Of a DNA stretch of 64,000 nucleotides, positions 42,104 to 64,000 are shown piece after piece (position 1 is the stretch's first letter; every line of letters starts with the position of its first letter). The notes beneath the pieces are model-generated. The model was not told where the DNA came from. It was given only the letters and a program-made list of their open reading frames with translations, and made no database searches. The stretch spans positions 1 through 64,000 of the IMG/VR virus record IMGVR_UViG_3300031952_000001; one strand, 5' to 3'. Made by a program: the position numbers and the translations under genes.

Positions 42104-42113
42104 CACATCCCCA

Positions 42114-42142
42114 AGTCTAATCATTCTGTCGGAATTTGTCAA
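42114..42142 (-). promoter_or_regulatory. sigma70 promoter of tnpB (TTGACA-N17-TAGACT)
   Basis: Minus strand reads TTGACAaattccgacagaatgatTAGACT, 10 nt before the ATG. Confidence 0.75.
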
Positions 42143-42173
42143 GTGGGCTTTTTTCCGGTTGACAGGATTCAGC

Positions 42174-47824: not shown

Positions 47825-48516
47825 GCGAAGAGGTCTGGGTCGTTCCCGAAGTGGCTTTGGCCTTTGTTCAAGGGTTGCAGTTCCCCCCGAAGCCCGAGTT
47901 CGCAGGGTTCGCGCAGTGCGATAACAGCATCCGCTGCTTCTGGACCACTCTGAAGAAGGCCTGCTTCACACCGCGCTCCTTGGCGGAGACTGACACGACG
48001 CACAAGCAGGTCATCCCCTATACGGTGGTCACCTCTGAAGGGCGCTATCTGTCCTACGAGCGGTCCGGTGGGAACGAGGCGCGGCTGGACAAGAAGTTTT
48101 CGATAGGCGTCGGTGGGCACATCAACCCAGAGGATGAGCTGACCAATTGGAAGAGGGTCGTGTTCTTCTCGGCTATGCGGGAGATCGATGAGGAGCTGTG
48201 CACTCTGGAGAACAACCGACGCTTTCCGGCCAGCTGGGCTGTGTACGACCAGCTGATGATCAAGGGGATCCTCTACGACGACTCTGACGAGGTCGGGCGC
48301 GTGCACGTCGGGGTGGTCCTACATGCTGACGTCAAGCCGGAGGTGGCGAAGCTCTTTCAGATGATCTCCGAGGGCAAGAACCTGACGTGGATGACGCCCG
48401 AGGAACTGCGGGCCTTGGGGGAGCGCCTGGAGGGGTGGTCGAGGAAATCGTTGAGGGCGCTCGAAGCCGGCGCGGTGGGGTGCTCGACCTCGCTGAGAGA
48501 TCTTTCTGAAGGATGA
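47821..48516 (+). CDS. NUDIX-family phosphoesterase (YmaB/COG4112-like)
   Basis: KQVIPY...EARL..KFSIGVGGHIN...MREIDEEL...GILYDDSDEVGRVHVG. Confidence 0.8.
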   Translation: MSEEVWVVPEVALAFVQGLQFPPKPEFAGFAQCDNSIRCFWTTLKKACFTPRSLAETDTTHKQVIPYTVVTSEGRYLSYERSGGNEARLDKKFSIGVGGHINPEDELTNWKRVVFFSAMREIDEELCTLENNRRFPASWAVYDQLMIKGILYDDSDEVGRVHVGVVLHADVKPEVAKLFQMISEGKNLTWMTPEELRALGERLEGWSRKSLRALEAGAVGCSTSLRDLSEG

Positions 48517-49259
48517 GTGACTGGTCTCCATTGAAGGCGCGGATCCAGGGCAGCTGTCCTGTGTGCTCCGGTACGGGTTTCGTCGGTGACGAGCTGTGCA
48601 CCTGCGCCATTAAGTTCCGAGTGTATAACCGGATGACGAAGGGGGGCTTCCACGAGGCGACTCTGGACCTTGTGAGTTCTCCGGAGTATCGGTGGCCTCT
48701 CATCGAGCAGGGTGCTGCTGAGCTGACCTACTTCGTGGGCAACCCCTTCGAGGTCCTGTCTCACGGTCTGGGTCTGTACCTGTTCTCGAAGGAGAACGGC
48801 CGCGGGAAGACGACGTTGGCGCACTACCTCGTGTACATGCTCTTGTGGGAGTTGTCGAAGACCGAGAACTATAGCCCGGATCGGACCTACTCTTTCGAGA
48901 ACATGCACGAGATGTGTGAGAAGGAGCGCCGGGGCTGGGATGACGAGACCTGGAAGTCGACGATCTTGGTGATCGACGACATCGGGACCGAGTCGCGGAG
49001 TGTGCAGTGGAAGAAGGACATCGCGCTCACGATGATGCACCGGATACTGCACTTCCGGCAGGACTACAGGCTCCCAACGATCTTCACCTCGAACTACGCG
49101 CCGAGCAGCGTCTCATCCTTCTACGAGGGGGTGCTTGATTCCGTGCTGGAGATCCGACCTGACGGCGTGATCGGGGGTCGCTCCCTGCGCCAGGTCGAGG
49201 TCGGCGGTGGTGAAGACTATCGGTTACAGCAAGGCGATCAAGGCGGGTGGCCGGTTTGA
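48513..49259 (+). CDS. DnaC/IstB-like AAA+ helicase loader
   Basis: N-terminal CPVC...CTC zinc motif; GRGKTT; ILVIDDIGTE; PTIFTSN. Confidence 0.8.
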   Translation: MSDWSPLKARIQGSCPVCSGTGFVGDELCTCAIKFRVYNRMTKGGFHEATLDLVSSPEYRWPLIEQGAAELTYFVGNPFEVLSHGLGLYLFSKENGRGKTTLAHYLVYMLLWELSKTENYSPDRTYSFENMHEMCEKERRGWDDETWKSTILVIDDIGTESRSVQWKKDIALTMMHRILHFRQDYRLPTIFTSNYAPSSVSSFYEGVLDSVLEIRPDGVIGGRSLRQVEVGGGEDYRLQQGDQGGWPV

Positions 49260-50623
49260 AGATCGATGTCAAAATCGAGGCCGAGTTCCTCGCCGCCGCG
49301 GTCCAGAAGCCGGGCATGATCGATCCTGACGTTCTGGCGGTAGTGGAGCCCGAGCACTTCCAGATCCCATCCTACAAGTGGCTGGTGAAGCTCCTGAAGG
49401 ACCGGAAGTGGAAGCCTCCTGTGTGGGACTTTCTCGATCAGGAGCTGCTCTCGGTCAAGGACCCTGAGGAGCTGAACAAGTACCGTGCCCAGCTGTGGTA
49501 TCTGTACACACTCCCACTCACGTTCCTGGAGGACGCTACTGAAAAGTTCCGGGCGTACGTTTCGTTCTGCATCATCAATTCGACGGCGCACGCGGCCTTC
49601 GAGGGGTTCTCGCAGACCCCTCGTGTGGACTACCTTTTGGAGGCCCTCGGGAAGGGGGTCCTGGAGGCCCGGAACGTTGTTCAAGGGCGAAAGCTGCGGG
49701 TCGTCGACTACGCCGACAACTACTCCGAGCGCATGTCCCGTCGGAGGGTGGCGCGCGACAACCCCAACCTGAACCCGCGGTTGATGACGGGGATCCGTGG
49801 GCTCGATGTGCAGTTTGTCATCAAGGCCCCCATGGTGTGCGACTTCATTGCCCCCTTCAAGCGGTACAAATCGATCTTCCTGAACGCCATGGGCTACGCG
49901 CTCCTGCTCCAGGGCTTCAACGTGCTCCACGTCACCTATGAGAACTCCGAGGAGATGACGATGGGCAGGTACGACGCGATGTTCAGTGAGCTGAACTACC
50001 AGCGCATCTCGAACCTGCTGCTCACTCAGGAGGAGAAGGACAACCTTGATCGGACCTTCGCGTGGATGAAGACCTGGGGTAACCGGCTGAAGATCGTGAA
50101 GGCGACCGCGGAGGAGACCACCGTGGCAGAGGTTGAGGTAGAGGTCGAGCGCTTCCGAGATCAAGAGGGGTGGTCTCCGGATGTCGAGATCTGGGACTAC
50201 TTGAACATCATCGCTCCCAGCGTCCGGTTCAAAGGCGAGGAGCGGCGCGAGCAGAAGCAGATCGTTTGGGACCTGAAGAGGCACGCAGAGAAGTTCAACA
50301 TTGCGATCTTCGAAGCGAGCCAGGCGAACATGGCCGGCGTGAAGGCTGACCGCCTCTCCCTGGAGCACCGCGGCCTGAGCATCGACATCTCCAGGGCACT
50401 GGACCTTTGTATAGCTATCGATCAGACGGACGACGAGCGTGATGAGGGGATCATCATCTTGAGCCCGCAGTTCGCGCGAGACGGATCGATCACGATCCCC
50501 GAGATCGTTCTCGATGCCGATCTGGCGCGGATGTCCATCTCCCGGGAACTGCACCGGTTGTGGGAACACGCTGCCAAGATCAATCCTTTCGTCGTTGACA
50601 AACCAGAGGTGCCTATAGTATAG
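49247..50623 (+). CDS. dnaB: DnaB-like replicative helicase with non-canonical Walker A
   Basis: TGIRGLD; APFKRYKS; VLHVTYE; IWDYL; IFEASQAN; DLCIAI; lies between loader and primase. Confidence 0.7.
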   Translation: MAGLKIDVKIEAEFLAAAVQKPGMIDPDVLAVVEPEHFQIPSYKWLVKLLKDRKWKPPVWDFLDQELLSVKDPEELNKYRAQLWYLYTLPLTFLEDATEKFRAYVSFCIINSTAHAAFEGFSQTPRVDYLLEALGKGVLEARNVVQGRKLRVVDYADNYSERMSRRRVARDNPNLNPRLMTGIRGLDVQFVIKAPMVCDFIAPFKRYKSIFLNAMGYALLLQGFNVLHVTYENSEEMTMGRYDAMFSELNYQRISNLLLTQEEKDNLDRTFAWMKTWGNRLKIVKATAEETTVAEVEVEVERFRDQEGWSPDVEIWDYLNIIAPSVRFKGEERREQKQIVWDLKRHAEKFNIAIFEASQANMAGVKADRLSLEHRGLSIDISRALDLCIAIDQTDDERDEGIIILSPQFARDGSITIPEIVLDADLARMSISRELHRLWEHAAKINPFVVDKPEVPIV

Positions 50624-50624
50624 A
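50595..50624 (+). promoter_or_regulatory. Possible sigma70 promoter upstream of primase (TTGACA-N18-TATAGA)
   Basis: Overlaps the helicase 3' end; AT-rich gap follows. Confidence 0.35.
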
Positions 50625-50662
50625 ACAAGGCTCTGATACGTGCCTTTTACGTGACTTTGTAG

Positions 50663-51607
50663 GTGAGAATGGATCCGAGAGACTACATCCTTTCCCGACT
50701 GCCTGGTATGGCGTTCAATTCCTCGGGGCAGATCCATACTAGGTGCCCGTTCCACAACGACAATTCCCCGTCTTTCTCGATCCGAGAGGACGGCGTTTTC
50801 GTGTGCGGGTCCCCGAAGTGCGGTATCCGCGGCTCGTTCGCCTACTTCTACAAGCTGATGGAGCACATCGAGTCGTGGGCGCAGGTCTACAAGGACCTCC
50901 GCCTCACGAACGTGACTCCTGACCTCGAAGAGTTGTTCGCCGAGAAGAAGGGCGAGACGAAGAAATACTGGATTTCCGACTTCCCGCAGCCACCGATGAT
51001 CGAGCCGATCAGGTCCATCAAGTACCTCGCTGACCGCGGTTTAGGACCTGATATTGTGTCCAGGTATGGTCTTTGGTATGGGGTCGGTGGGGCAAGCGCC
51101 GGTATCGCCATCTCGGACTCCATCGTCGCACCTGTCTACGATCTCAACGGGGCCTATGTCACCTTCCAGGTTCGGTACCTCGCGCCCTCGGCTCCGCAGC
51201 GGTGGAAGATGCCGAGCGGTTCTGCGGCTCAGACTATTCTCTACGGCGGGTGGCTGGTAGGTTCGGTGGTCAGCAAGCACCTCTGGATCGTGGAGGGCGC
51301 GAGTGACGTTTGGAAGCTGGCGAGCTTCGGAGCCCAGGCCGTGGGACTCTTCACGAGCAAGGCCTCTGCATCCCAGCTCAACCGAATCCGAGATCTCTGT
51401 GTCTGCCACTCCTTGCAGCCTGTTGTGTGCCTGGACGGGGACGCGCGGTTCGTGAAGGGGGGCAAGGAGATCGATCTCGGTCTGAAGATAGCGAACGAGC
51501 TGGCGGCTTTCGGGCTCGATGCGCTGTTGGTCCATCTGGACAAGGTGGAGGATCCCGGGTCTTTGACATACGACCGGCTCCGAGAGCTGAATGGGGCGCT
51601 GTCTTGA
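50663..51607 (+). CDS. dnaG: DNA primase (CHC2 zinc finger + TOPRIM)
   Basis: CPFHNDNSPSF...CGSPKC; IVEGASD; CLDGD. Confidence 0.88.
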   Translation: MRMDPRDYILSRLPGMAFNSSGQIHTRCPFHNDNSPSFSIREDGVFVCGSPKCGIRGSFAYFYKLMEHIESWAQVYKDLRLTNVTPDLEELFAEKKGETKKYWISDFPQPPMIEPIRSIKYLADRGLGPDIVSRYGLWYGVGGASAGIAISDSIVAPVYDLNGAYVTFQVRYLAPSAPQRWKMPSGSAAQTILYGGWLVGSVVSKHLWIVEGASDVWKLASFGAQAVGLFTSKASASQLNRIRDLCVCHSLQPVVCLDGDARFVKGGKEIDLGLKIANELAAFGLDALLVHLDKVEDPGSLTYDRLRELNGALS

Positions 51608-52365
51608 AGAGTGCTCTGCAAAAACAGATTTTGACTATCACGGAGGCTCTGAAGCGCGACGATTCTGAGCAGGCGCAGGTTTTCTGCAAGATGGCTCCTT
51701 TCGTTTTCAAGTCGGTGGTCCGGATCGCTCAGATGACCAATACTTCCGAGGAAGACATCCTCGGAGAAGTCCTCTGCGTGTTCTCTGCTGCTTGTGATCT
51801 CTACAAGGCCCCTGTCTACAAGTACCGTGAGTCCTTGTACCAGTGTCGTGGGGAGGAGGGGGGACTACTTCTTCTGGAGACCCCGAAAGGGAACAAGATT
51901 CGAAGGTCTCTGAGAGTGGAGAAGTCGAAGGTCACCGAAGTACGCCGAGCAGAGTTCTTCAACTTCCTTTACAAAAAGATCCAGCAGCAGTGTGTTGATA
52001 TTTTGCGGGGATCTTTCATGTGTAAGAGGGCTGTTTCTACCGAGGTGATCTCTTTGGAGGGTTGCGATGACGGCATGCTCGGTGCGCGGGTTGATTTTTC
52101 CAGCGATCCAGAGAGCCTCTTCTCGGCGGCGCAGATGTACTATGAAATCGTTCCGCAGCTTTCTGATCAGGCACGAAAAGTCTTTGATCTCTTTATAGAG
52201 GGTGCGTTTAAGTCGAACAAGGGTTTGTCGAACAGTCTGCGGATGAGCATGCGCAGCGTCTCGGCGGCGAAGCAGGAAATACTTCGTGCCTACTACCGCA
52301 CGGAGCGCTCTTTCGTTCAGGATTCGGAGTTGCAACCCATCTACCTAACGGCGGGTGACTTTTGA
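51604..52365 (+). CDS. Putative phage sigma70-family factor
   Basis: Region-2-like helices (EEDILGEV...FFNFLYKKIQQQCVDILR), VISLE, region-4-like LSDQARKVFDLF...LSNSLRMSMRSVSAAKQEI; TTG start. Confidence 0.5.
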   Translation: MKSALQKQILTITEALKRDDSEQAQVFCKMAPFVFKSVVRIAQMTNTSEEDILGEVLCVFSAACDLYKAPVYKYRESLYQCRGEEGGLLLLETPKGNKIRRSLRVEKSKVTEVRRAEFFNFLYKKIQQQCVDILRGSFMCKRAVSTEVISLEGCDDGMLGARVDFSSDPESLFSAAQMYYEIVPQLSDQARKVFDLFIEGAFKSNKGLSNSLRMSMRSVSAAKQEILRAYYRTERSFVQDSELQPIYLTAGDF

Positions 52366-53516
52366 TAACGATTCAGGACAACGGCTTCATCGTCGACTAC
52401 CACTTGATGACCGACTTCTGTCGAGCCCTGGAGAAGTGCAACCCCAAGAACGACTACGTCTACCTGTCCTACGATGGCGCGGTTTTCAGCATGTTCTCGC
52501 AGACCGTTACTGCTTCCGTCATCGTGTCTCTCAACGCGACAGGAGGCAAGACCTTTGGTTTCGGTGTCGAGTCGGGGAAGTTTTTGTCCTTGTGGAAGAA
52601 GCTGTATGTGGGCAGCACCATTAAGTTCAAACCTTCCCGGGAGCAGCTCATCATCTCGGAGGACAACATCTCGGTGAAGTTCCCGACGGTACAGCACATC
52701 AAGCACTACAAGTTTCCCGAGATGATCACGGTATTTGGTCCACATGTCGAGGAGCTGACGAAGGCCTTGTCGATTTGTGAGGTCTCCGTTGGCGCGAACA
52801 AGCAGGCTCCGGGGATCCTGATCGACAACACCGCTCCGGGGATGTGCCGGGTGGTTAAGATCGGGAATTACTCCTACCGGATGTGCTCTTGCAGCAAGCA
52901 ATCGTTCGGGGATGTCCGTATCGTCGTTTCGGACGAGTTCTGTTCCGCGGTTTCCGCGCTTTCGAAATGGTCTAAGTCTTCGTCCTTGTTCGGGTCCATC
53001 ACGGCGCTTATGGTGTCTCCGGCCAAGGTCGGAGCTGTGCTGAGCAGCGGCGTCCAGTTCTACATGCCCACCTTGCACGACGCGATCCCGTCGTCCTATG
53101 TGTACGACTTCCGGTTGCTGCCGAACAGCCTGGAGCAGGTCGCTCGTGAGGGGCGTGTCTACACGTTCAGCCAGAAGCGGCTCTCCGAGGTGCTCGATCT
53201 GGTGGCTGCGGTGATCGGGACCGAGGAGTCAATGCTCCTGATGGAGATCGATGGTCTGGCAGCGGCGTCCGGCAATCCAGTGTTCAAGATCAGCGCGAAG
53301 ACCCACGACGGCTGCGAGGTCTCGGAGTTGGTAGAGGCCCTTTCGAAGGGCCCGACGGATCTGGAACCCTTTAGGGTAAACAAGAGTCAGGCGCTCTTGG
53401 CACTCAAGAGCTACGAAGGAAATCTGGTTCTTATCGACCGGCTCAACAACCCCCTGCTCGTCCTGCAAGACGAGTCCGGGAGGGACGTGACGTTCCTCCT
53501 CAAAGCTCCGGCGTGA
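52362..53516 (+). CDS. Putative DNA sliding clamp (beta-clamp-like, 384 aa)
   Basis: Length, alternating alpha/beta three-domain pattern, C-terminal PLLVL...VTFLL; DnaX-like loader nearby. Confidence 0.55.
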   Translation: MITIQDNGFIVDYHLMTDFCRALEKCNPKNDYVYLSYDGAVFSMFSQTVTASVIVSLNATGGKTFGFGVESGKFLSLWKKLYVGSTIKFKPSREQLIISEDNISVKFPTVQHIKHYKFPEMITVFGPHVEELTKALSICEVSVGANKQAPGILIDNTAPGMCRVVKIGNYSYRMCSCSKQSFGDVRIVVSDEFCSAVSALSKWSKSSSLFGSITALMVSPAKVGAVLSSGVQFYMPTLHDAIPSSYVYDFRLLPNSLEQVAREGRVYTFSQKRLSEVLDLVAAVIGTEESMLLMEIDGLAAASGNPVFKISAKTHDGCEVSELVEALSKGPTDLEPFRVNKSQALLALKSYEGNLVLIDRLNNPLLVLQDESGRDVTFLLKAPA

Positions 53517-54274
53517 AAGGTGGTCCCATGGCGAAGGCTAAGGCTAAGGCGAAAGAGAAAGTGAAGACGAAGAAGGAGCAACCGACGGAACCCGTGGTCC
53601 TTGGGCAGAAAGTTGTTCTGGACTCGGAGATCCTCGGGGAGATCAATCGCCACTACTCCGCGCGCCTCGGTGACGAAGTTCTCGGCCGTGAGTGCTTCTC
53701 CGATCCCAAGCTGGACAGCCACATTTGCAGCGTCCGGTCGAAGGTTCCCGGAGGGGATACCTGCAAGTCCTGCGGTGGCATCGAGGGGCGGCCTTGCACT
53801 GTCACCTGCCATGTGCATCATTTCTGCCTGGCGACCTACGCTACCCGGCTGGGCATCGGGGTGACGAAGAAGACCCTGCTCGTGAAGTGGATCAAGCACA
53901 ACATCAGTGAGCTGACCTACGCGGAGCTGTACGATCTCGTGGTGTCCCGCAAGGCTCTTTTGGAGGAGGCGAAACCCGAAGAGGTCCTTGAGCAGCCGAT
54001 CAAGGACCGTGCTCAGACGGATCTGAACCTTCCGGATCCTCCACCGGCCGAGAAGAGGCCTGTGCGCCCCGAAGCACTCATCGACAAGGATGCTCTGGAG
54101 GTGGAGGGCTTGATAACGATGAAGACCGCGGCAGAGATCTTCGGTTGCTCGTACATGAATATGATGGGGCATGTGCGCCGCGGGAACCTCAACACGGTAC
54201 AGAAGTCGGGAGCCACTTTCTTGAAGAAAGAGGAAGTCCTTCAGCTGAAAGAGCGTGTAGGGAAAACCCAGTGA
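53513..54274 (+). CDS. Cys-rich protein with C-terminal excisionase/MerR-like HTH
   Basis: Several Cys/His; LITMKTAAEIFGCSYMNMMGHVRRGNL. Confidence 0.55.
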   Translation: MKGGPMAKAKAKAKEKVKTKKEQPTEPVVLGQKVVLDSEILGEINRHYSARLGDEVLGRECFSDPKLDSHICSVRSKVPGGDTCKSCGGIEGRPCTVTCHVHHFCLATYATRLGIGVTKKTLLVKWIKHNISELTYAELYDLVVSRKALLEEAKPEEVLEQPIKDRAQTDLNLPDPPPAEKRPVRPEALIDKDALEVEGLITMKTAAEIFGCSYMNMMGHVRRGNLNTVQKSGATFLKKEEVLQLKERVGKTQ

Positions 54275-54846
54275 TGAAACCTCTCAGAGTCTCTGAATTC
54301 GGGGACACGAGCGCCCTGGTTGAGGTCTACCAAAAGACGGTGGAGCCCTCCCAGAAGACGTTCTTCGATGTGGTGTGCGCATCGGAGTGCGTTGAGGGGA
54401 CGACTCGCTACCTTTCACCCCTGGTGAGGATCCCCAGCATCCCACATTTGGTCGTTGCGGTCATGGAAGCCATGACCTACATTTCGGATCGGCATAAGGA
54501 GATCCGGGACGCAGACTGCGGACCTCCTGTGCTCCTGGAACAGCCGCAGCGTGTCATTCGGTTCCTCGAAGAGGGACCCTCGGAGGCGTTCCAGCTGAAG
54601 TACAGTGGGATCAAGGAGTTCAAGAGTGGCTCCGTCATTGGGGAGCTTCTGGTCTCCGAGGAAAACGGGACTCAGGTATTCTACGTTTGCTGCTGGAGGG
54701 AGTTCACGAACAACGGTGCTCGGGTGCGGGATTTCTTCATCCAGCAGCGGGATCTCCGAAGCCTCGTCACTGTCCTGATGCGCGCGTGGATCTACTTCCA
54801 GGAACACTGGGGAAGCCACTCTCCAGTGGAAAGCCGCAGGTGGTAG
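54274..54846 (+). CDS. Hypothetical protein (190 aa)
   Basis: TGATG coupling with the upstream gene; ends directly before the polymerase ATG. Confidence 0.65.
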   Translation: MKPLRVSEFGDTSALVEVYQKTVEPSQKTFFDVVCASECVEGTTRYLSPLVRIPSIPHLVVAVMEAMTYISDRHKEIRDADCGPPVLLEQPQRVIRFLEEGPSEAFQLKYSGIKEFKSGSVIGELLVSEENGTQVFYVCCWREFTNNGARVRDFFIQQRDLRSLVTVLMRAWIYFQEHWGSHSPVESRRW

Positions 54847-57063
54847 ATGTTTTTCTCTAACATCGAGGTCCCGAAGACCTATCACCTGATCGACAGCCCC
54901 AAGAAGTTCTCGTGGCTGGCTTCGGTGTTGCTCGACTCGAAGGAGTTCTCCTTCGACATCGAGACCAACTACCCCACCTCCAAGTCGATGAAGGACAAGA
55001 TCCCGAGGAACTACCCTCACAAGGTGTGTGGCATCTCCTTCTCTTGGGGGCGGACGGAGATCGTTCGCCCTTGGACTCCCGGGAACGCGGCCTACATCCC
55101 GTTGAGCCGTTCTGACGATTCGCCTTTTTGGGGATCCCGTCAGGTCCATATCGAGGGTCTCCTCAAGGAGATCCTTGAGAGCCCCATTCCGAAGGTGGCT
55201 CAGAACGGCAAGTTCGATGTTCGGCAGCTCGCGAACCTCATGCAGATCTACACAAGGGACTTGAAGTTCGATACGATGCTCGCACACACGCTTCTGGACG
55301 AAGACTGCGTGACCTCTTCGCACGCCTTGAAGTCCAACTTCAATGTCGAGGGGAAGGTGACCAAGCTGGGCATCTCGGATGCGTACTTGGACACCGCGGC
55401 GAGCCAGTTCAAGGGTGATCTCGATCAGGCTTTGAGGTTCTACGATCCCCAGATGCTGCGCTACTCCAAGGTCCCGCTGAACGTCCTCTACCCCTACGGT
55501 TGCGCCGACGCCGATCTGACCCTGTCGTTGAAGTACGTGTTCATGCCGCTTCTGGAGGCTGAGGAACTCATTGCGTTGAACGACAACCTGATCATTCCGT
55601 TGCAGCACACCTTGATGCTCATGGAGCTGCACGGGGTTCCTTTGGACCTGCATCGGGCTCAGCAGGTGAAGGCTGAGCAGGAGCAGATCATCGAGGTCAA
55701 CACTCAGCGCATCCAGGCGATCTGCAACGCGAAGTTCAACGTCAGCTCCACGGATCAACTCGGGAAGCAGCTTTTCGAGGTCATGGGGATACCCGGAAAG
55801 CACACTGCTGACGGCTCCTGGAGCACGGACATGGACTTTATCAGGGGTTTGGACCACCCCATTCGTGAGCCCCTCCTGGAGTTCCGTCGCGCGCAGCAGA
55901 TCCACAACCTCTATGCCGAGCCGGCGCTGAACAAGGTTGTCGAGATCACGAACCAGGGCTACATTGGCTGGGTCCACCCGGAATACTGGATGGACTCGAA
56001 GACCGGACGCCTGAAGCTGAGGGACCCCAACTTGACGACGTTGCCGCGCCCCGAGAACGGCGGCCTCGTCGTGAAGTCGATGTGGTGCACGGACGACGCG
56101 CACCGGATGGTCTTCAAGGACTTCTCTCAGATCGAGCTGAAGGTCATCGCGCACATCTCGGGAGAGCCGGTCTGGGTGGACGGCTTCAACAACGGCTACG
56201 ATATGCACGCCGCGATGGCGAAGAAGATCTGGAACCTTCCTTGTGAGGTTCATCAGGTGAAGGACCTGTACTCCAAGGAGCGCTCTCATGCCAAGACCAT
56301 CAACTTCGGCATCGCGTACGGGCAGAGTGAGAAAGCTCTTGCTGAGAGCCTCGGGATCTCACAGGAGGAGGCTCACAAGCTGATCTGGGAGGACTACTTC
56401 GGAGCGGCTCCGGTGCTGAAGCAGTGGATCGACGATACCCATGAGTTCGTCAAAAACTACGGTTACGTTCGGAACATCTTCGGTCGCAGGCGGCACCTCC
56501 CTGAGGCTAGTACAGTGGTCCCCAAGGGTGTTCCCGGGCCCACCTGGGAGAAGCGCCCCACTTGCTACAAGAAGGACGGTCCGTATCCGAAGTGGTTGGG
56601 CATCCCTCTGGAAGAACTCTACCCGATGCCCATAGACGTGTTGCAGGACCACCTCAAGTCGAAGAAGGGGAACACGTTTAGCTCTTGTAGAAGCTGTCAC
56701 TACGTTCGGTCCTGTGTCATCAACCACGAGGTACTCCGGGCTCAGAGCATCGTCAACAGGGCGCTCCGTCAGTCCGTGAACAGCCCCATCCAGGGCTCCG
56801 CGGTCGACATGGCGTCTCTGTCTTTGGTTTGGATCAGTAGGGAGATCATCAAGCACGGCTTGAAGGCTGCTCCGATCCTCCACATCCACGACGAACTGGT
56901 GGTCCACTCGCACGTCGAGTGCGTTGAGCAGGTGAGCCGCCTCATGGACGACTGCATGACGACCCGGCTGCGAGAGGTCACGCAGTTCAGGGTGCCATTG
57001 ACGGTCGACACGGAGGTTTGCCAAAGGTGGAGCGACCGTTATCGACACAAAGAAGAGGCGTGA
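54847..57063 (+). CDS. polA: Family A DNA polymerase with 3'-5' exonuclease domain
   Basis: FDIET, QNGKFD, DTML (exo); TGRL...PNL, DFSQIELKVIAH (A), RSHAKTINFGIAYG (B), IHDEL (C). Confidence 0.95.
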   Translation: MFFSNIEVPKTYHLIDSPKKFSWLASVLLDSKEFSFDIETNYPTSKSMKDKIPRNYPHKVCGISFSWGRTEIVRPWTPGNAAYIPLSRSDDSPFWGSRQVHIEGLLKEILESPIPKVAQNGKFDVRQLANLMQIYTRDLKFDTMLAHTLLDEDCVTSSHALKSNFNVEGKVTKLGISDAYLDTAASQFKGDLDQALRFYDPQMLRYSKVPLNVLYPYGCADADLTLSLKYVFMPLLEAEELIALNDNLIIPLQHTLMLMELHGVPLDLHRAQQVKAEQEQIIEVNTQRIQAICNAKFNVSSTDQLGKQLFEVMGIPGKHTADGSWSTDMDFIRGLDHPIREPLLEFRRAQQIHNLYAEPALNKVVEITNQGYIGWVHPEYWMDSKTGRLKLRDPNLTTLPRPENGGLVVKSMWCTDDAHRMVFKDFSQIELKVIAHISGEPVWVDGFNNGYDMHAAMAKKIWNLPCEVHQVKDLYSKERSHAKTINFGIAYGQSEKALAESLGISQEEAHKLIWEDYFGAAPVLKQWIDDTHEFVKNYGYVRNIFGRRRHLPEASTVVPKGVPGPTWEKRPTCYKKDGPYPKWLGIPLEELYPMPIDVLQDHLKSKKGNTFSSCRSCHYVRSCVINHEVLRAQSIVNRALRQSVNSPIQGSAVDMASLSLVWISREIIKHGLKAAPILHIHDELVVHSHVECVEQVSRLMDDCMTTRLREVTQFRVPLTVDTEVCQRWSDRYRHKEEA

Positions 57064-57085
57064 GGACGCCCGAGGGAGGATCGAG

Positions 57086-58183
57086 ATGCAGAAGCAAAGA
57101 TTGACGGCGCGGGAGGTGGACAAGTTCTTCTCCAAGGAGCGCCCGGTGTTCGTTCGGAACGTTTTCAAGGGCCAGATCAGCATGATGCTGGAGCGGGAAG
57201 GAAGGCCCTTGAGCTTTTTGATACCTCGGGGGGACAACTGGTTGCGGCTGGATTTCCCCTTCGAGGTCCTCAAGAACTCGGTCGACCTCAAGAGGTTCCT
57301 CCTCAAGCCGAACCCCCCGATGCAGCTGTGGCTCGGAAAGAAGGCTCCGAAGGGGTACAAGCTCCAGCAAGCAACCCACTCTTTCGATGTGGTACCAATC
57401 CCCGAGCTTGAAGAGATCACGATGCCCCCGGTGGACCCCAACGTCGTCCACCCTTCACCGGGTAGGGACGCCTTCGGGATCATGACTTTCAACAAGGTCG
57501 TGGAGGCCTTCGCGGAGGAGCACGAGGCGCTCCTCACGCAGATCGACTTCCACCACAGGAGCCTGGAGGTCGCCGAGGCTCGTTTCAACGAGGTGGACCC
57601 CGTCTATGGCGTTCTCGTGTGGTTGAAGGAGAACGTGTTCGACGAAGAGCCGAAGAAGCAGCTCATCCGGAACGCTCTGTTCGGGAAGGACGAGCCTGGC
57701 GTGGGCGAGAAGGCGGACTACACACTGCCGAGGACCTACAGCGCTCTCAAGGAGTGGGTGAAGGTGATCTCGTCGAACGGCAAGTACGCCAACCTCCAGG
57801 AGAGGTTCAAGGCATACAAGGCGGGCGCTCGGAACGGATACAACCCCAAGGAGGAGTCGGTCGAGTCCCTCGGTCTCCATGCCAAGGAGGCTGAGGCCGC
57901 CCCGAAGGCGGCGCACACGCTTCGGTCCGTACCTGAGATGAAGGCTCAGGCTCTTCAGGATCAAGAAGGGGCTCATTTGAAGCGCGCTTTCGACCTGATG
58001 AACGGGGAATCCGATCCGGCTGTCGAGCAGGCAGAAGACGACATCCAGAAGTCCCGTGACATCTCGAAGAAGCTCGTTTGCGACGTTTGCGGATTCGTGG
58101 CGAAGAGTTCGAAGGGCCTCGGGCCCCACAAGGCCAAGGCGCACGGCAAGAAGGCTTCTCGGTCGAAGAGGAAGGGAAGGTAG
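57086..58183 (+). CDS. Hypothetical protein with C-terminal C2H2 zinc finger
   Basis: GGAGG RBS; VCDVCGFVAKSSKGLGPHKAKAH. Confidence 0.7.
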   Translation: MQKQRLTAREVDKFFSKERPVFVRNVFKGQISMMLEREGRPLSFLIPRGDNWLRLDFPFEVLKNSVDLKRFLLKPNPPMQLWLGKKAPKGYKLQQATHSFDVVPIPELEEITMPPVDPNVVHPSPGRDAFGIMTFNKVVEAFAEEHEALLTQIDFHHRSLEVAEARFNEVDPVYGVLVWLKENVFDEEPKKQLIRNALFGKDEPGVGEKADYTLPRTYSALKEWVKVISSNGKYANLQERFKAYKAGARNGYNPKEESVESLGLHAKEAEAAPKAAHTLRSVPEMKAQALQDQEGAHLKRAFDLMNGESDPAVEQAEDDIQKSRDISKKLVCDVCGFVAKSSKGLGPHKAKAHGKKASRSKRKGR

Positions 58184-58185
58184 CC

Positions 58186-59061
58186 ATGGCGAAGGCACAA
58201 TGGGTTCGTTGGAAGGACGGCGGGGGCCCTCGGGTCATCGGATCCGTCGGGTTCAACCCCGCGCAGCCCTGGGGGCCCTGGACGAAGGTCCTCGGCGTGG
58301 TCGCGCGTTGCGAGGGCAACCACGACACCGTCGTCATGTACGACGGCACGGGGGTGACCTGGGGGTTCCTACAGTGGACTTTCACCAGCGGCCGGCTCCA
58401 GAAGCTCCTGGAGAGCTTCAAGTCGATCCCGCTGGAGAACGGACACCACACCTTGTTCGATCAGGTGTGCTTGGAGGCTATCGGGGGTCCTCAGGTCTTC
58501 TCCCGGTTCGGCTTCCAGATCAGAGATGGGAAGTTCTGGGTTGGTGGAGTGGCCCTTGACCCCAGCAATTCTGCCAGCAAGAAGTGGATCGTCGACATCT
58601 GCATGGGTGTCGAGTTGGCTAACCCGAACAAGACGGCGCTCGCGCTCGCGCAGCTGTTCGCGGACATGGGTGCGAAGCCCGGTGTCCCCGAGGCCCAGCT
58701 CGCGTACGCCAAGGCCGAGTTCGCCCGGCAGCTCGACTACCCGAGGCCTCCGCTGGGAGGGAGGACCATCAGGGACCTGCTCAAGGCGGACAACCCGGCG
58801 TCGTGGGACTCCGCTCTGGTCGCGTTGTTCTTCAACCTGTGGCAGAACAACCCGGGGGCGGCCTACAAGCTGTTCTTGAAGGCCACGTCCAGCTCCAGTG
58901 ATCTCGTCGAGGACTACTTCCGGAAAGCCTGGAAGATGACGAACCTCTCGACGTTCGGGCAGTGGGGCTGGAAGAACGACCCGAAGAGCCCGAGGTGTTT
59001 GCGCATCGCCAAGGCGATCAAGGAGTTCTACGGCATCGCTTTGCCGTTCTATAAACCTTGA
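58186..59061 (+). CDS. Putative endolysin/lysozyme-fold glycosidase
   Basis: VVARCEGNHDTVVMYDGTGVTWGFLQW resembles the catalytic Glu helix plus beta-hairpin of lysozyme-fold enzymes. Confidence 0.55.
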   Translation: MAKAQWVRWKDGGGPRVIGSVGFNPAQPWGPWTKVLGVVARCEGNHDTVVMYDGTGVTWGFLQWTFTSGRLQKLLESFKSIPLENGHHTLFDQVCLEAIGGPQVFSRFGFQIRDGKFWVGGVALDPSNSASKKWIVDICMGVELANPNKTALALAQLFADMGAKPGVPEAQLAYAKAEFARQLDYPRPPLGGRTIRDLLKADNPASWDSALVALFFNLWQNNPGAAYKLFLKATSSSSDLVEDYFRKAWKMTNLSTFGQWGWKNDPKSPRCLRIAKAIKEFYGIALPFYKP

Positions 59062-60143: not shown

Positions 60144-60495
60144 GGAGTACAAGCCCCCTTGGTTCGTGAACATTCAGTGCCCGGAGTGCCGGAGGTGGAT
60201 GCGGAGAAGGGGTACGTTCGAGACCGAAAAGTACGTCGACTTGACGGTCTACTGTGGGAACTGTGGGATCGAGGACAGTGTCCGGCTGACTCCGGAAGAG
60301 TACAGGAGATTGGTTCATGACGACACAATCGGAAGCCTTCCAGAGCATAGCGGAGTTCGTGGGCCCGAAGGGCGACCGCTGGGTGCTCGACGAGTCTCTG
60401 AAAAAGATGGCGGAGGAGCTGGTCGAGCGGTATTCGGAGGATCTCGGACACGTCAAATTGGGGCACGTCGTATTCGTTCGCGCGATAGGGGTTAG
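60127..60495 (+). CDS. Small zinc-ribbon protein (3' part overlaps the next gene)
   Basis: CPEC...CGNC; codon usage degrades after ~60316. Confidence 0.45.
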   Translation: MSVGGEEYKPPWFVNIQCPECRRWMRRRGTFETEKYVDLTVYCGNCGIEDSVRLTPEEYRRLVHDDTIGSLPEHSGVRGPEGRPLGARRVSEKDGGGAGRAVFGGSRTRQIGARRIRSRDRG

Positions 60496-61009
60496 CAGTA
60501 CGACGTGGCTCGGCAAGATCAAGTACCTCGGGAACGCTCCGGACCCGCTCATCGCGCGCTACGTCCTCGCGACCCTCGGGTCCATGGGTATGCTCGATCT
60601 CACGCAGCTGCGTGGTCTCGAAGCCGACCTGATGGACATCAGGTACGTCGTCATGATCAACGACACCGCCATGCGCGCCAAGTCCGGTGCGAGCGCGAAC
60701 GCGGAGATGCTCCGGGCGACCTTGGAGAGGATCACGCTGTACCATGAGCTGACTCACATCAAGCCGGCTATGGACGGGCTCGTTCCTCACGACACCCAGG
60801 ACTTCAAGAGGGTGCTGTACCGGTTCGGCGTGTACTGGTCCTCGGGGATCATCAACCAGACCGATCCCGTCGATTTGGCGGCTGCCGAAGACGCGGCCTC
60901 CAGATTCGCGGAGCAGCTGAACAAGGGTGGCGCGACCTTCGAGGTAGCCGTGCACCACGGGATTCCGTCGGGTGTGCCCTCTGGGGTTCCCGAAGGCCCC
61001 AAGGAGTAG
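60317..61009 (+). CDS. Putative phage metallopeptidase
   Basis: ITLYHELTHI...PHDTQDF (HExxH...HD), preceded by YVVMIN. Confidence 0.7.
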   Translation: MTTQSEAFQSIAEFVGPKGDRWVLDESLKKMAEELVERYSEDLGHVKLGHVVFVRAIGVSSTTWLGKIKYLGNAPDPLIARYVLATLGSMGMLDLTQLRGLEADLMDIRYVVMINDTAMRAKSGASANAEMLRATLERITLYHELTHIKPAMDGLVPHDTQDFKRVLYRFGVYWSSGIINQTDPVDLAAAEDAASRFAEQLNKGGATFEVAVHHGIPSGVPSGVPEGPKE

Positions 61010-61012
61010 AAC

Positions 61013-61675
61013 TTGTCGGGAAGGTACTCCATAGCCATCAAGGGCAGCCAGGTGAACGTCGCGCTGGACGAGAGTCTTCTCCAGCAGGACGTCGAGGACA
61101 TGCTGACCTTCAACCCGGAGGACGTGGAGCACCTTTTGAGGACCCATTCCGGCAACCAGTCGTACTGGGAGGCACTGTCGATCCGCCTGTCTTCCAGGCA
61201 CGAGAACTTCGTGGACGTCTGGGCGAAGAAGTGGTGGGCGCACAGCAACACCTATGCTCGGGCGGTTCTGGCTGCGTACGGGGACACCAAGCCTACAGGT
61301 CCCGCGGTTCAGGACATGGCGGTGCAGATCTACGCCGCGGACACGTCCGAGGTCGAGCGCAAGAAATACGCGGCGCAGGCTCACGACCTCGCGGCCAAGA
61401 AGCTCTCCGTGGGCACCTTCGACGAATACTACAAGGACATGTACAAGTACCAGATGCTGACACCTCCATGGTACTTCGAGACCGTCAGCGAGACGGCGTC
61501 GAAGCTCAAGGAGGATGCGGATCTGGTGAAGAGCATCGCGTCCAAGCTGCATGACAAGTCCTTCCACTTGGGGGCCTACGCCAGGGCCTTCATGGCGAAG
61601 TACGGGAACGTGGGACCTATGAATGTGAACGAGGCCGCCATCATGGAGGCGGCTGGTGGATACAGGAAAAGCTAA
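61013..61675 (+). CDS. Helical hypothetical protein, possibly a UvsY-like recombination mediator
   Basis: All-helical; sits upstream of SSB-like and recA genes; function from synteny only. Confidence 0.4.
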   Translation: MSGRYSIAIKGSQVNVALDESLLQQDVEDMLTFNPEDVEHLLRTHSGNQSYWEALSIRLSSRHENFVDVWAKKWWAHSNTYARAVLAAYGDTKPTGPAVQDMAVQIYAADTSEVERKKYAAQAHDLAAKKLSVGTFDEYYKDMYKYQMLTPPWYFETVSETASKLKEDADLVKSIASKLHDKSFHLGAYARAFMAKYGNVGPMNVNEAAIMEAAGGYRKS

Positions 61676-61707
61676 CTGCCGCCAGTGAGGCGGTGAGGAG
61701 GAAGCCT

Positions 61708-63462
61708 ATGGGCGAGTTTTCGATGCCGTATCAGAGAGAGCGTGACAACGAGGACCGAAAGGGGCCGCTCGTGAAGGAGCTGTGGCGTCCGCTTCCGAAC
61801 AAGGAGGGGATGATGCACTTCAACAACGTGCTCCTCCCGCTGTTCACCCCGCACGCCTGGAAGATGTTCAATCCGACGGAAGAGATGCGCCGGAAGTACC
61901 ACATGTGCGCCCCCACCCCAGGGTCCACTCTGGTGGGTCTCGATCCGTCGAACCCGATCTTCACGTTCTACTTCAAGCTCCCGATCCACCAGGTCGACAA
62001 GTTCAACCGGCCGGACGGCAGCACGGGTTTCGCTTCGGTACTCTGCCCCCTCGGCACCAACAAGTACCTTCAGGAGTCCTTGGGACGCGGTCCGTTGTTC
62101 GAGCAGCCCGTGCGTTGCGCCCACTGCGAGGAGTCGCAGCGTCAGTGGGATCTCTTCAACGCCCGGTGGGAGGCTCTCGGGATCGACAAGAAGGCTCTCT
62201 CGTCGGACGGCTACCGGGACATGTGCACGCGGGATCCTGTCTTGGCGGTGACGAAGAGGGCTGCGAAAGACATCGGAGCTTGGGACAAGTATTTCTTGGC
62301 GATTTTCGACCACGACAAGTTCGTGGGGGCGCGTCCCTTGGGTGAGGGCGACGATCCGGCCACGCTGCACCAGGCGTGGTTCGCTCCGAAGTCGGTGCAC
62401 TCGAAGCTGCTCCGGCTGTTCGATGGCGGGGCTCAGTCTGGTGGGGCTCCGCAAGGACTTCGGTTCTTCGAGAACACTCAGGGCGGATTCCCGATCATCT
62501 CCATCGTGAAGGACACGAGCAAGTGCAAGAAGAACAACCTGCGGGACACGGAGTACGATGCCGTGTTCAACAATCGGTTCTTCCAGTACCCGCCCGAGTG
62601 GCTCGCGTACATCCAGAACTACGCCGCGTTGGTCGATCCGACGGAGACCCTGGTTCACCTTGTCACCTACGAGGAAGGGCTCCACTACGTCAGCCAGACG
62701 AAGTCCTCGGGGAACGACTACCAGCAGGCGCAGCAGCAGATGACCGGCGGGGCAGCCCCTGGTGGGATGCCTCCGGGGATGGTCGGGGCCCCACAGGGAC
62801 AGCCCCCGTATGGCGCTCCTCCGGGCAGCCCTCCGGCAGCCGGTTGGGCGGGCGCGACGGGGTACCCTCCGGTCGGGAACGCCGGCCAGATGCCCATGAT
62901 GCCTCCTCCGGGAATGCCCGCTGGTCTGCCCCCCGGTGCGAACCCTCTGGGGGCTCCTCCGGGACAGCCTCCGATGGGACAGCCTCAGTACGGCCAGGCC
63001 CAGCCCCCGGCGCAGCAGATGCCCTACCAGGCCCCTCCGGGCCAGGCTCCTGGGCCGGCTCCGTACCCGGGCATGGCTCCGGTTCAGCAGGCTCCGGCTC
63101 CGCAGTATCCGGCGCAGCAGCAGTACAACCCAGCTCCTGGGCAGATGCCCCAGGGAATGCCTCCAGGAGCGCCCCCAGCGGCTCAGCAGCCTCCGCAGCA
63201 GTACGGGCAGCCCCAAGGTCAGATGCCCCCGGGGACGCCCCCCATGGTCGGTGGAGCCCCTCCGCAGGGGATGCCTCCGATGGCTCCGCCGCCCCAGCAG
63301 TCGTACGGTGGGGCTCCGGTGCCGAATCAGCCGCCGGCCGTTCCCCCTCCGGGCACGGTTCCGCCGATTGGGGTGGTGCCCGGCTTCGCTCCGCCGCCGC
63401 CCGACAGGGCTCCGACGCCACCCGCTGAGGGTGCTGGTGGTCCGCCGATGCGGCAATGGTAG
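61708..63462 (+). CDS. Putative gp32-like single-stranded DNA-binding protein with ~245-aa P/Q/G-rich tail
   Basis: AGGAGG RBS; Cys/His cluster (HMC, LCP, CAHC); YFLAIFD...WFAPKSV...YDA; directly upstream of recA. Confidence 0.55.
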
Positions 63463-63476
63463 GAAGGGGGCCTCTC

Positions 63477-64000
63477 GTGGTGAAGGACAAAGAGAAGAAG
63501 GCCGCGGAATCTGTGGTCGAGCCGGCAGTGGACATTCTCCGCAAGATCCAGGCGGAGAAGGAAAGCCAGGTGTACGGGATCCAGATGCTGGAGGGCACGA
63601 AGATCGAAAACGTGCCACGGTCTTCTTCCGGCATCTTGAGCGTCGACATCGCTCTGGGGGGTGGGTATCCCTTGGGTCGTGTCGTTGAGATCTACGGATC
63701 TGAGGCCTCCGGGAAAACGACCCTCACCCTTCATGCCATCGCAGAGGTGAATCGCAAGGGTGGGACCGCGGCGATCATCGATCTGGAGAACGCCTTGGTC
63801 CCTGCGTACGGGAAGGTGCTGGGTGTCGACTGGTCGAAGACCTTGATCTCGCAACCCGATAACGCAGAGGTCGCGCTGAACCTGGTCGAGCACCTTTGCG
63901 GCCACATGAAGTCGGGCGACATGATCGTCGTGGATTCGGTGGCTGCGCTCACCCCCGAGGCTGAGATGAGCGGGGAGATGGGGGACTCGCACATGGGTCT
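63477..64000 (+). CDS. recA: RecA recombinase, 5' part (runs off the window; absent from the ORF track)
   Basis: [41 protein letters not shown]...ISQPDNAE...[25 protein letters not shown]. Confidence 0.96.

What the first reader, a model, noticed from the sequence alone, without database searches (positions are those of the whole stretch)
62710..63462. SSB-like protein ending in a ~245-aa Pro/Gln/Gly prion-like tail instead of an acidic tail
Seen: from [10 protein letters not shown] onward the sequence is almost entirely P, G, Q, A and M with spaced Tyr, nearly uncharged, and ends ...PPMRQW; the gene sits immediately before recA. Established: gp32/SSB proteins usually end in short acidic tails, and Tyr-spaced Q/G/P low-complexity domains drive phase separation. 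Inference: a condensate-forming scaffold for phage replication/recombination compartments.
Basis: partly seen in the sequence, partly recalled or inferred. Interest (0 to 1): 0.6.

Follow-up and report, generated by a model that had tools for sequence, protein, structure and literature searches.

The report
Phage gp32-type SSB, long tethered tip
[quoted passage not shown] That is the layout of bacterial SSB built on a different fold, and it may, but is not shown to, form condensates.

Summary
The gene (ATG 61708 to stop 63462, + strand) ends in a 244-residue tail of P 32%, G 17%, Q 14%, A 14%. The tail contains a 228-residue run with no charged residue, unique in the six-frame translation of the 212-kb genome. 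The gene stops 7 nt inside recA.

The N-domain matches no Pfam or PHROG family. Its AlphaFold model (pLDDT 84) matches only the T4 and RB69 gp32 cores (Z 11.2; next unrelated hit 4.8). A His/Cys3 set in gp32's order is conserved. The genome holds no other SSB candidate.

In 87 full-length relatives the tail is 38-252 residues long and always Pro-rich. Its Q/G/M/Y flavour is confined to this lineage. 85 of 87 relatives have W or F within the last six residues, usually after K/R and a P-D-R motif. A few relatives carry an E. coli-SSB-like acidic tip instead.

Best reading: a gp32-fold SSB with a disordered tether and a docking tip. The linker composition resembles the E. coli SSB linker, which phase-separates, so condensation is plausible but untested. 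"Prion-like" is doubtful. This is a new variant of a known kind.

The parts
61695..61701 (+). Shine-Dalgarno-like GAGGAGG, 6 nt upstream of the ATG at 61708
   Evidence: Read directly from the sequence. Homologues begin at the residue that corresponds to this ATG.
61708..63462 (+). Whole gene: 584-aa gp32-fold SSB with linker and tip. The mechanical ORF starts at GTG 61693.
61708..62727 (+). N-terminal globular domain of 340 aa: a gp32-type OB core with a zinc subdomain and extra helical insertions.
   Evidence: AF2 model with pLDDT 84.1 and pTM 0.80. Foldseek top 5 hits are all gp32 cores. VIA-align gives Z 11.2 to 2a1k_A (206 of 215 residues aligned) and to 1gpc (200 of 218); the next unrelated hit scores 4.8. 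BFVD hits are named ssDNA-binding proteins. Atlas neighbours are viral clusters, one with 17% PF08804 members.
61987..62127 (+). Candidate zinc site: His99, Cys118, Cys142 and Cys145 (ORF numbering from GTG 61693), in the order H...C...CxxC as in T4 gp32 (H64, C77, C87, C90).
   Evidence: The four residues are invariant in 20 homologues and kept in 78-84 of 87 family members. T4 ligand positions were read from NC_000866. Spatial proximity in the model could not be inspected.
62728..63384 (+). Disordered linker of 219 aa: P 32%, G 17%, Q 16%, A 14%, M 7%, Y 4%, with no charged residue.
   Evidence: It evolves by in-frame indels. Its length and composition vary across the family.
63385..63459 (+). 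Conserved C-terminal tip: ...[18 protein letters not shown]-...-M-R-Q-W-COOH.
   Evidence: The tip is 100% identical in the 95%-identical homologue, where the linker is 90% identical. Of 87 family members, 85 have W/F in the last 6 residues and 61 end in W. K/R lies within 5 residues before it in 75. P[DNE]R occurs in the last 35 residues in 43, against 2 of 553 linker windows. Trp is 0.09% of the rest of the tails.
63456..64000 (+). Start of recA (RecA/UvsX-type recombinase). It overlaps the SSB stop by 7 nt and runs beyond the window to genome position 65795.
   Evidence: Pfam RecA E 1e-47 for the window part and 1.5e-86 for the full ORF. recA lies immediately downstream in all four family loci examined.
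61013..61675 (+). Conserved 220-aa protein of unknown function, always directly upstream of the SSB gene. It is a possible partner or mediator.
   Evidence: Synteny. 30 homologues found. The model is a long helical hairpin with no specific fold match.

Best explanation
This is the phage's own ssDNA-binding protein, serving the replication/recombination module in which it sits. That module contains a DnaB-like helicase, a primase, PolA, a clamp-loader-like ATPase, this SSB, RecA, and Mre11/Rad50-like proteins. The protein has three parts. (1) A 340-residue core with the T4 gp32 fold: an OB barrel plus a His/Cys3 zinc subdomain that should coat ssDNA. The fold is shown; DNA binding is inferred. 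(2) A 219-residue charge-free Pro/Gly/Gln/Ala linker that cannot fold and acts as a long flexible tether. This is inferred from composition, rapid indel evolution and variable length. (3) A conserved ~20-25-residue C-terminal tip (P-D-R ... basic ... Trp-COOH). I read the tip as a docking peptide: its terminal aromatic residue and free carboxylate would insert into a pocket on one or more partner proteins, or on a neighbouring SSB core. E. coli SSB (..DDDIPF) and T7 gp2.5 (terminal Phe) use their tips in this way. This reading is inferred from conservation and from relatives that carry an E. coli-like ..DDDVPF tip in the same place. So the protein has the core-linker-tip logic of bacterial SSB on a gp32 scaffold, with a non-acidic tip that would be private to the phage. 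In this lineage the linker is unusually long and has the G/Q/P/A composition of the E. coli SSB linker. It may therefore add weak multivalent self-association (condensation) on top of tethering, but that is a secondary, untested property.
For: Fold. Conserved H/C/C/C in gp32's order. No other SSB (PF00436) or gp32 (PF08804) signal in the 212-kb genome. Replication/recombination context and conserved synteny with recA. Linker properties and family-wide variation. Tip conservation statistics. recA starts 10-14 nt after the stop in L002 and L004 and 52 nt after it in L007, so the terminal Trp codon is not imposed by the gene overlap. Acidic SSB-Ct-like tips in P0089, P0037, P0035, P0017 and P0019. 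Linker composition versus the E. coli SSB linker gives cosine 0.82, against 0.14 for the T4 acidic domain. The E. coli SSB architecture (OB, Gln/Gly/Pro-rich linker, conserved C-terminal peptide) and its phase separation: PMC7584906, PMC12143593.
Against: No sequence-level link to gp32 or to any SSB family was found, so ssDNA binding rests on fold and context alone. The core is about 120 residues larger than the gp32 core and lacks gp32's basic N-terminal cooperativity motif. No partner of the tip is identified. In this particular protein the basic patch before the Trp is reduced to one Arg.
Confidence: 0.7

Rival explanations
1. Condensate scaffold. The main job of the tail is to drive phase separation, through Tyr, Met, Gln and Pro contacts, so that ssDNA, RecA and replisome proteins concentrate in a phage replication/recombination compartment.
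For: The tail is 219 residues without charge, with 9 Tyr, 1 Trp and 1 Phe as potential stickers and G/Q/P/A spacers. Its composition is close to the E. coli SSB linker, and that linker is required for SSB droplets (PMC7584906; tuned by Gly-rich and aromatic residues in PMC12143593). The tail is the third longest of 87 in the family and its Q, G, M and Y contents are near the family maxima.
Against: The Q/G/M/Tyr flavour is not conserved. Most relatives have P/A/V/T linkers with no Tyr and as few as 20 linker residues, so condensation through these stickers cannot be the family's conserved function. A gp32-type SSB is expected to be monomeric, so it lacks the tetramer valency of E. coli SSB (background knowledge). 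Pro at 32% argues against amyloid or prion behaviour. No LLPS predictor or experiment was run.
Confidence: 0.3
2. Self-regulation or cooperativity element. The tip binds the core of the same or a neighbouring SSB molecule rather than other proteins. It would play the part of gp32's N-terminal basic peptide (cooperativity) or of its C-terminal flap (autoinhibition), with the long linker allowing contacts beyond the nearest neighbour.
For: Many tips read (K/R)2-4-S/N-W, which recalls gp32's N-terminal K-R-K-S-T motif (T4 sequence read; tips). This family lacks a basic N-terminus. Members with acidic tips carry K/R at three core positions where basic-tip members are mostly neutral. In E. coli SSB the tip also binds its own OB fold (PMC7584906, PMC12143593).
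Against: The charge pattern is confounded by relatedness, because the acidic-tip members share many other residues. Tips such as ..DDDVPF look like mimics of the host SSB tip and point to external partners. This protein's own tip has only one basic residue near the Trp.
Confidence: 0.3
3. Not an SSB. The gp32-like fold has been recruited for another role, for example a recombination mediator or annealing protein for the adjacent RecA, or a regulator.
For: There is no sequence membership in any SSB family. The core carries large insertions relative to gp32 (340 versus ~215 residues). Linkage to recA is tight.
Against: It is the only SSB-fold protein detectable in a genome that encodes its own helicase, primase, polymerase and recombinase. 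BFVD neighbours are annotated SSBs. The zinc ligands are conserved.
Confidence: 0.1
4. Artefact. The tail is an untranslated GC-rich open frame or a mis-assembly of a low-complexity repeat.
For: Several frames are open over this GC-rich stretch. Codon-position GC is not diagnostic inside the tail.
Against: The tip is conserved in frame behind variable linkers in about 85 independent cluster representatives. Only in-frame indels are seen. Contigs in two runs are identical over the tail.
Confidence: 0.02

Closest known systems
T4 / RB69 gp32 (PDB 1gpc, 2a1k; Pfam PF08804)
   Same: The core fold is the same: Z 11.2 with 200-206 of 215-218 residues aligned. The ligand order His...Cys...Cys-x2-Cys is the same. 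It is phage-encoded and sits in a replication/recombination gene block. It has a disordered C-terminal region.
   Different: There is no detectable sequence similarity. The core is about 120 residues larger. It has no basic N-terminal K-R-K-S-T cooperativity peptide. Its C-terminal region is a 219-residue uncharged Pro/Gly/Gln linker plus a Trp-ended tip, whereas gp32 has a 48-residue Asp/Ser-rich acidic domain (composition cosine 0.14).
E. coli SSB (Pfam PF00436): OB fold, Gln/Gly/Pro-rich intrinsically disordered linker, conserved C-terminal peptide ..DDDIPF
   Same: The three-part logic is the same: core, low-complexity linker, conserved tip ending in an aromatic residue. The linker is made of the same four residues (G, Q, P, A; cosine 0.82). 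A few family members even carry ..DDDVPF or ..NDDVPW tips. The E. coli SSB linker and tip underlie partner recruitment and phase separation (PMC7584906, PMC12143593, PMC7145534).
   Different: The core fold family differs and there is no PF00436 match. The oligomeric state is probably monomeric rather than tetrameric (not tested). The linker is four times longer (219 versus 56 residues) and richer in Pro. The tip is not acidic, being P-D-R...R-x-W.
T7 gp2.5 (phage SSB with an acidic C-terminal tail ending in Phe). Comparison from background knowledge, not tested here.
   Same: Both are phage SSBs whose extreme C-terminal aromatic residue is the key contact for the phage polymerase and helicase. 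That is the model for what the terminal Trp may do here.
   Different: The fold class and dimeric state differ. The gp2.5 tail is short and acidic, with no long linker.

Membership tests
gp32 family (T4-type SSB, PF08804) | Significant match to the family's sequence profile | tested here: not met
   The window protein has no Pfam hit at E<=0.1. Of 20 homologues scanned at E<=10, one touches PF08804 at E 0.03, below the cut-off. The family HMM finds nothing in the genome. hhalign against T4 gp32 gives probability 0.2%.
gp32 family (T4-type SSB, PF08804) | gp32 core fold (OB barrel with zinc subdomain) | tested here: met
   The AF2 model has pLDDT 84. The Foldseek top 5 are all gp32, with probability 0.82-1.00. 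VIA-align gives Z 11.2 at rmsd 3.5-4.0 over 200-206 residues, and the next unrelated hit scores 4.8.
gp32 family (T4-type SSB, PF08804) | His + 3 Cys zinc ligands in the order H...C...CxxC | tested here: met
   H99, C118, C142 and C145 are invariant in 20 homologues and kept in 78-84 of 87. The order matches T4 H64/C77/C87/C90. Spacing differs: x18/x23/x2 here versus x12/x9/x2 in T4. Geometry in the model and metal content were not checked.
gp32 family (T4-type SSB, PF08804) | Basic N-terminal cooperativity peptide (K-R-K-S-T) | tested here: not met
   The N-terminus is a conserved mixed-charge M-P-Y-Q-R-E... segment. The T4 N-terminus was read.
gp32 family (T4-type SSB, PF08804) | Acidic C-terminal domain that binds replisome and recombination proteins | tested here: not met
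   The tail has 2 acidic residues in 244. Partner binding could not be tested.
gp32 family (T4-type SSB, PF08804) | Cooperative, sequence-independent ssDNA binding | not testable with these tools
   This needs biochemistry.
Bacterial SSB (PF00436) | Match to the SSB OB-fold profile | tested here: not met
   No hit in the protein or in the genome. The control genomes ring in 12 of 14.
Bacterial SSB (PF00436) | Low-complexity disordered linker followed by a conserved C-terminal tip ending in an aromatic residue | tested here: met
   This is a resemblance of architecture, not of descent.
Bacterial SSB (PF00436) | Acidic tip D-D-D-I-P-F | tested here: not met
   This protein ends ...G-G-P-P-M-R-Q-W. 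The feature is met only in a few distant family members, such as P0089 and P0037.
Prion-like / phase-separating low-complexity domain | Q/N-rich, low-charge, low-complexity composition with spaced aromatic residues | tested here: inconclusive
   Low charge (0 of 219), entropy of 2.94 bits and 9 spaced Tyr are met. Q+N is only about 15% and Pro is 32%, which disfavours amyloid-type prion behaviour (background knowledge).
Prion-like / phase-separating low-complexity domain | Score above threshold in PLAAC, PScore or catGRANULE | not tested
   These programs and their parameter tables are not available here, and I did not re-create them from memory.
Prion-like / phase-separating low-complexity domain | Compositional conservation among relatives | tested here: not met
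   Only Pro-richness (median 27.6%) and low charge (median 4.2%, though up to 39% in some members) are typical of the family. Q, G, M and Y are near the family maxima in this lineage and near zero in most others.

The most novel reading that the evidence does not exclude
A large, unannotated family of gp32-fold SSBs in uncultured big phages has independently evolved the bacterial-SSB design of core, disordered linker and terminal docking peptide. It uses a new, non-acidic docking code (P-D-R...basic...Trp-COOH) that is orthogonal to the host's ..DDDIPF code. The phage would then run a private SSB interaction hub, while a few lineages have switched to the host code. In the lineage of this window the linker has expanded to about 220 G/Q/P/Tyr-rich residues and drives condensates that concentrate RecA and the replisome on ssDNA.
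Probability: 0.3. Interest if true: 0.7.

Novelty: new variant of a known kind. Interest (0 to 1): 0.5.

Why it matters
SSB tails act as switchboards for replication, recombination and repair. Two codes are well studied: the acidic gp32 domain, and the bacterial or T7 acidic tip that ends in Phe. This family has 104 cluster representatives at 50% identity, and none of the nine homologues examined here has a Pfam domain on record or is named beyond "hypothetical protein". It offers a natural experiment. The gp32 core is the same across members. Linker length varies more than tenfold (20-227 residues among the 20 aligned homologues) and linker chemistry also varies. The tip comes in at least two alternative chemistries, basic-Trp and acidic-Phe/Trp. 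That makes three questions directly testable: what linker length and composition contribute (tethering versus condensation), how a phage keeps its SSB hub separate from the host's, and which partner reads a Trp-COOH tip. It also shows that current family libraries miss the SSB of a whole group of large sediment phages.

Tried and rejected
- **Sequence searches for the N-domain found nothing usable.** These were Pfam, PHROGs, tblastn against 50,697 phage records, a profile search of PDB sequences, and hhalign against T4 gp32. Only the fold links it to gp32.
- **Complex prediction gave no verdict.** I tested RecA of locus L002 against the last 45 residues of its own SSB (P0006). The score was 0.00 and the controls were not run. 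This is neither support nor evidence against binding.
- **The upstream 220-aa protein is not identifiable as a gp59-like helicase loader.** The idea came from T4, where gene 59 lies next to gene 32. hhalign shows no similarity. The model is a long helical hairpin whose matches (Z 8-10) are generic coiled coils. Function remains unknown.
- **Gene overlap does not explain the terminal Trp.** I asked whether the overlapping recA ATG imposes the Trp codon. In L002, L004 and L007 recA starts 10-52 nt after the stop, yet the Trp is kept.
- **Charge co-variation between tip type and core is inconclusive.** Three core positions are K/R in acidic-tip members, but those members are probably related.
- **The ESM Atlas feature search with the tail alone gave no usable hit**.
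- **Codon-position GC is uninformative as a coding test inside the tail,** because Pro, Gly and Ala codons dominate.
- **PLAAC-type scoring was not run,** because there is no program or parameter table here.

Full report
**What is there**

The window is the first 64 kb of a 211,982-bp virus record that CheckV rates as complete. Near-identical sequence occurs in sediment metagenomes. Its DNA polymerase is less than 31% identical to that of any phage in a 50,697-record collection, so this is an uncultured lineage.

The finding lies in ORF 61693..63462 on the + strand. The probable start is ATG 61708, which lies 6 nt after GAGGAGG and is where all homologues begin. That gives a protein of 584 residues. 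I use ORF numbering from the GTG at 61693 below.

- From residue 346 to the end there are 244 residues: P 32%, G 17%, Q 14%, A 14%, M 7%, Y 4%.
- The 9 Tyr are spaced 6-42 residues apart.
- The only four charged residues lie in the last 25, and the protein ends ...PPMRQW.
- A run of 228 residues without D, E, K or R is unique in the six-frame translation of the whole genome; the next longest is 88.
- The stop codon overlaps the ATG of recA.

The tail is genuinely coding:
- The same terminal peptide follows linkers of 20 to 227 residues in 19 homologues.
- The 95%-identical homologue differs in the tail only by in-frame gaps.
- A strain variant in another sediment run has a 12-nt in-frame insertion behind 63144.
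- Contigs of two runs match the tail without a single difference.

**The N-domain is a gp32-type SSB core, recognisable only by fold**

Sequence methods find nothing:
- Pfam and PHROGs give no match.
- tblastn against the phage collection gives no match.
- A profile of 20 homologues finds nothing among PDB sequences.
- hhalign against T4 gp32 finds nothing.
- One homologue of 20 touches PF08804 at E 0.03, below the cut-off.

The structure is clear:
- An AlphaFold2 model built from the 20-sequence alignment A1 is confident (pLDDT 84.1, pTM 0.80).
- The top five Foldseek matches in the PDB are all gp32 cores from RB69 and T4.
- VIA-align gives Z 11.2 to 2a1k_A (206 of 215 residues, rmsd 4.0) and to 1gpc (200 of 218, rmsd 3.5). 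The best unrelated chain scores 4.8.
- In BFVD, 19 viral models match at E<1e-3, and several are named ssDNA-binding protein.
- The ESM Atlas neighbours are viral clusters, and one has 17% PF08804 members.

His99, Cys118, Cys142 and Cys145 are invariant in A1 and kept in 78-84 of 87 family members. Their order matches the T4 zinc ligands H64, C77, C87 and C90, which I read from the T4 record. I could not inspect their geometry in the model.

The genome gives no signal for PF00436 or PF08804 elsewhere. This is therefore the only SSB candidate in a phage that encodes all of the following:
- an exonuclease and an SNF2 helicase
- a DnaB-like helicase and a DnaG-type primase
- PolA and a clamp-loader-like ATPase
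- RecA, an Mre11-like phosphoesterase, a Rad50-like ATPase and ThyX

**The tail is a linker plus a conserved tip**

A full HMMER search of 1.84 billion representatives found 104 clusters. Of these, 87 are full-length with a tail of at least 30 residues.

| Feature across the 87 tails | Value |
|---|---|
| Tail length | 38-252 residues, median 117 |
| Rank of this protein's tail by length | third |
| Pro content | median 27.6% |
| Charged residues in the linker | median 4.2% |
| W or F within the last six residues | 85 of 87 |
| End exactly in Trp | 61 of 87 |
| K or R within five residues before the terminal aromatic | 75 of 87 |
| P-[D/N/E]-R in the last 35 residues, mostly 16-20 residues from the end | 43 of 87 (2 of 553 linker windows) |
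| Trp in the rest of the tails | 0.09% of residues |

The other residues in the tail are free to vary. Q, G, M and Y are near the family maxima in this lineage. Most relatives have P/A/V/T linkers without Tyr.

The gene overlap does not impose the Trp, because recA starts 10-52 nt after the stop in three other loci.

A few members replace the basic tip with an acidic one. Examples are ..YPDGIQW..DDDDGIDW..NDDVPW and, in P0089..GNDDDVPF, which is essentially the E. coli SSB tip.

Between this protein and its 95% relative, the core is 95% identical, the linker 90% with indels, and the tip 100%.

**Mechanism**

The shown and inferred steps are as follows.

- Shown: the fold, the conserved ligand set, the gene context, the composition, the family-wide pattern of a variable linker with a conserved tip, and the alternative tip chemistries.
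- Inferred, ssDNA coating: the core coats ssDNA.
- Inferred, tether: the charge-free Pro/Gly/Gln segment is disordered and acts as a long tether.
- Inferred, docking: the tip is a docking peptide whose terminal aromatic residue and carboxylate are read by a partner pocket. E. coli SSB and T7 gp2.5 work this way (background knowledge; for E. coli SSB see PMC7584906 and PMC7145534).

The partner is not identified. RecA is the obvious candidate, because recA is the next gene in every locus examined. My one complex prediction gave no verdict and counts neither way.

The tip could instead bind a neighbouring SSB core and provide cooperativity. The only hint for that, a charge pattern at three core positions, is confounded by relatedness.

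**Condensates**

The linker's composition is close to the E. coli SSB linker (G 30%, Q 20%, P 14%, A 11%; cosine 0.82). It is unlike gp32's acidic domain (cosine 0.14). The E. coli linker is a Gln/Gly/Pro-rich region that PLAAC flags and that is needed for SSB phase separation (PMC7584906). Its Gly-rich, aromatic and positively charged residues tune condensation (PMC12143593).

This protein has a linker four times as long, with 9 Tyr. It could well self-associate.

Three points argue against making that the primary function:
- The sticker-rich flavour is lineage-specific.
- gp32-type proteins are not expected to be tetramers.
- 32% Pro speaks against amyloid-type "prion" behaviour.

I put condensation at about 0.3, as a secondary property of this lineage rather than the conserved function.

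**Comparison and novelty**

In function the protein resembles a hybrid: a gp32 core with a bacterial-SSB-style linker and tip.

It is not a member of PF08804 or PF00436 by their profiles. It also lacks gp32's basic N-terminal peptide and acidic C-domain, and the acidic tip of bacterial SSB.

I file it as a new variant of a known kind: a distant, unannotated branch of gp32-fold SSBs with a new tail design.

**Neighbours**

The 220-residue protein encoded directly upstream is conserved in position and in sequence (30 homologues). Its model is a long helical hairpin without a specific structural match. It shows no similarity to T4 gp59.

RecA in this phage is 779 residues long because of a 426-residue insertion with intein-like ends. 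Three relatives have RecA of 331-342 residues.

**Limits**

- No experiment was done and the tail was not modelled.
- No LLPS or prion predictor was run.
- The zinc site geometry was not inspected.
- The tip's partner is unknown.

Noticed in passing
Genome G000:C1 63456-65795 (L006:456-2795). The insertion is at about 64095-65372, just beyond the window end.: The recA ORF is 779 aa, against 331-342 aa in three related phages. A 426-residue insertion sits after ..F-I-N-Q-I-R. It begins with Cys, ends ..T-H-N and is followed by Ser, which are intein-like boundaries. The inserted part has no Pfam hit at E<=1e-3.
   Followed up: partly
window 61013-61675 (+): A conserved 220-aa protein is always encoded directly upstream of the SSB gene (30 homologues). 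Its model is a long helical hairpin with no specific fold match and no similarity to T4 gp59. It is a possible mediator or partner of the SSB and RecA.
   Followed up: partly
Family members P0089, P0037, P0035, P0017, P0019 (L007, L008): A few relatives carry acidic tips in place of the basic-Trp tip. P0089 ends ..GNDDDVPF and P0037 ends ..NDDVPW, which are close to the E. coli SSB tip. This suggests switches between a phage-private and a host-like docking code.
   Followed up: partly
window 63144 (tail), run X3: A strain variant in an independent sediment metagenome has a 12-nt in-frame insertion (Pro-Pro-Gln-Gly), the same kind of indel that separates P0001 from P0002. The linker length is polymorphic in nature.
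   Followed up: yes
window 7957-38389 (+): A run of very large + strand ORFs (768 to 1588 aa) shows no PHROG match at E<=1e-5. Only 26088-27518 matches a baseplate wedge subunit. This is presumably a highly divergent tail/baseplate module.
   Followed up: no
window 60317-61009 (+): A 'putative phage metallopeptidase' domain protein (PF18894, E 1.8e-9) sits between the clamp-loader-like gene and the SSB block. It is also present in L004.
   Followed up: no
window 41967-59061 and genome 66051-70366: The replication/repair block contains an exonuclease (41967), an SNF2 helicase (44856), a DnaB-like helicase (49247), a DnaG-type primase (50663) and PolA (54847). Downstream of recA lie an Mre11-like phosphoesterase (66051), ThyX (67451) and a 711-aa protein with a weak SMC_N match (E 0.0067, below Pfam's cut-off; Rad50-like by position) (68231). 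ORFs 57086-58183 and 58078-59061 are conserved but unassigned.
   Followed up: partly
window 61672-63618 (-) and 62376-63428 (+): Long alternative-frame ORFs (648 aa and 350 aa) overlap the SSB gene. They are Arg/Ser/Gly/Ala/Pro-rich readings of the same GC-rich codons and are most likely not genes.
   Followed up: partly
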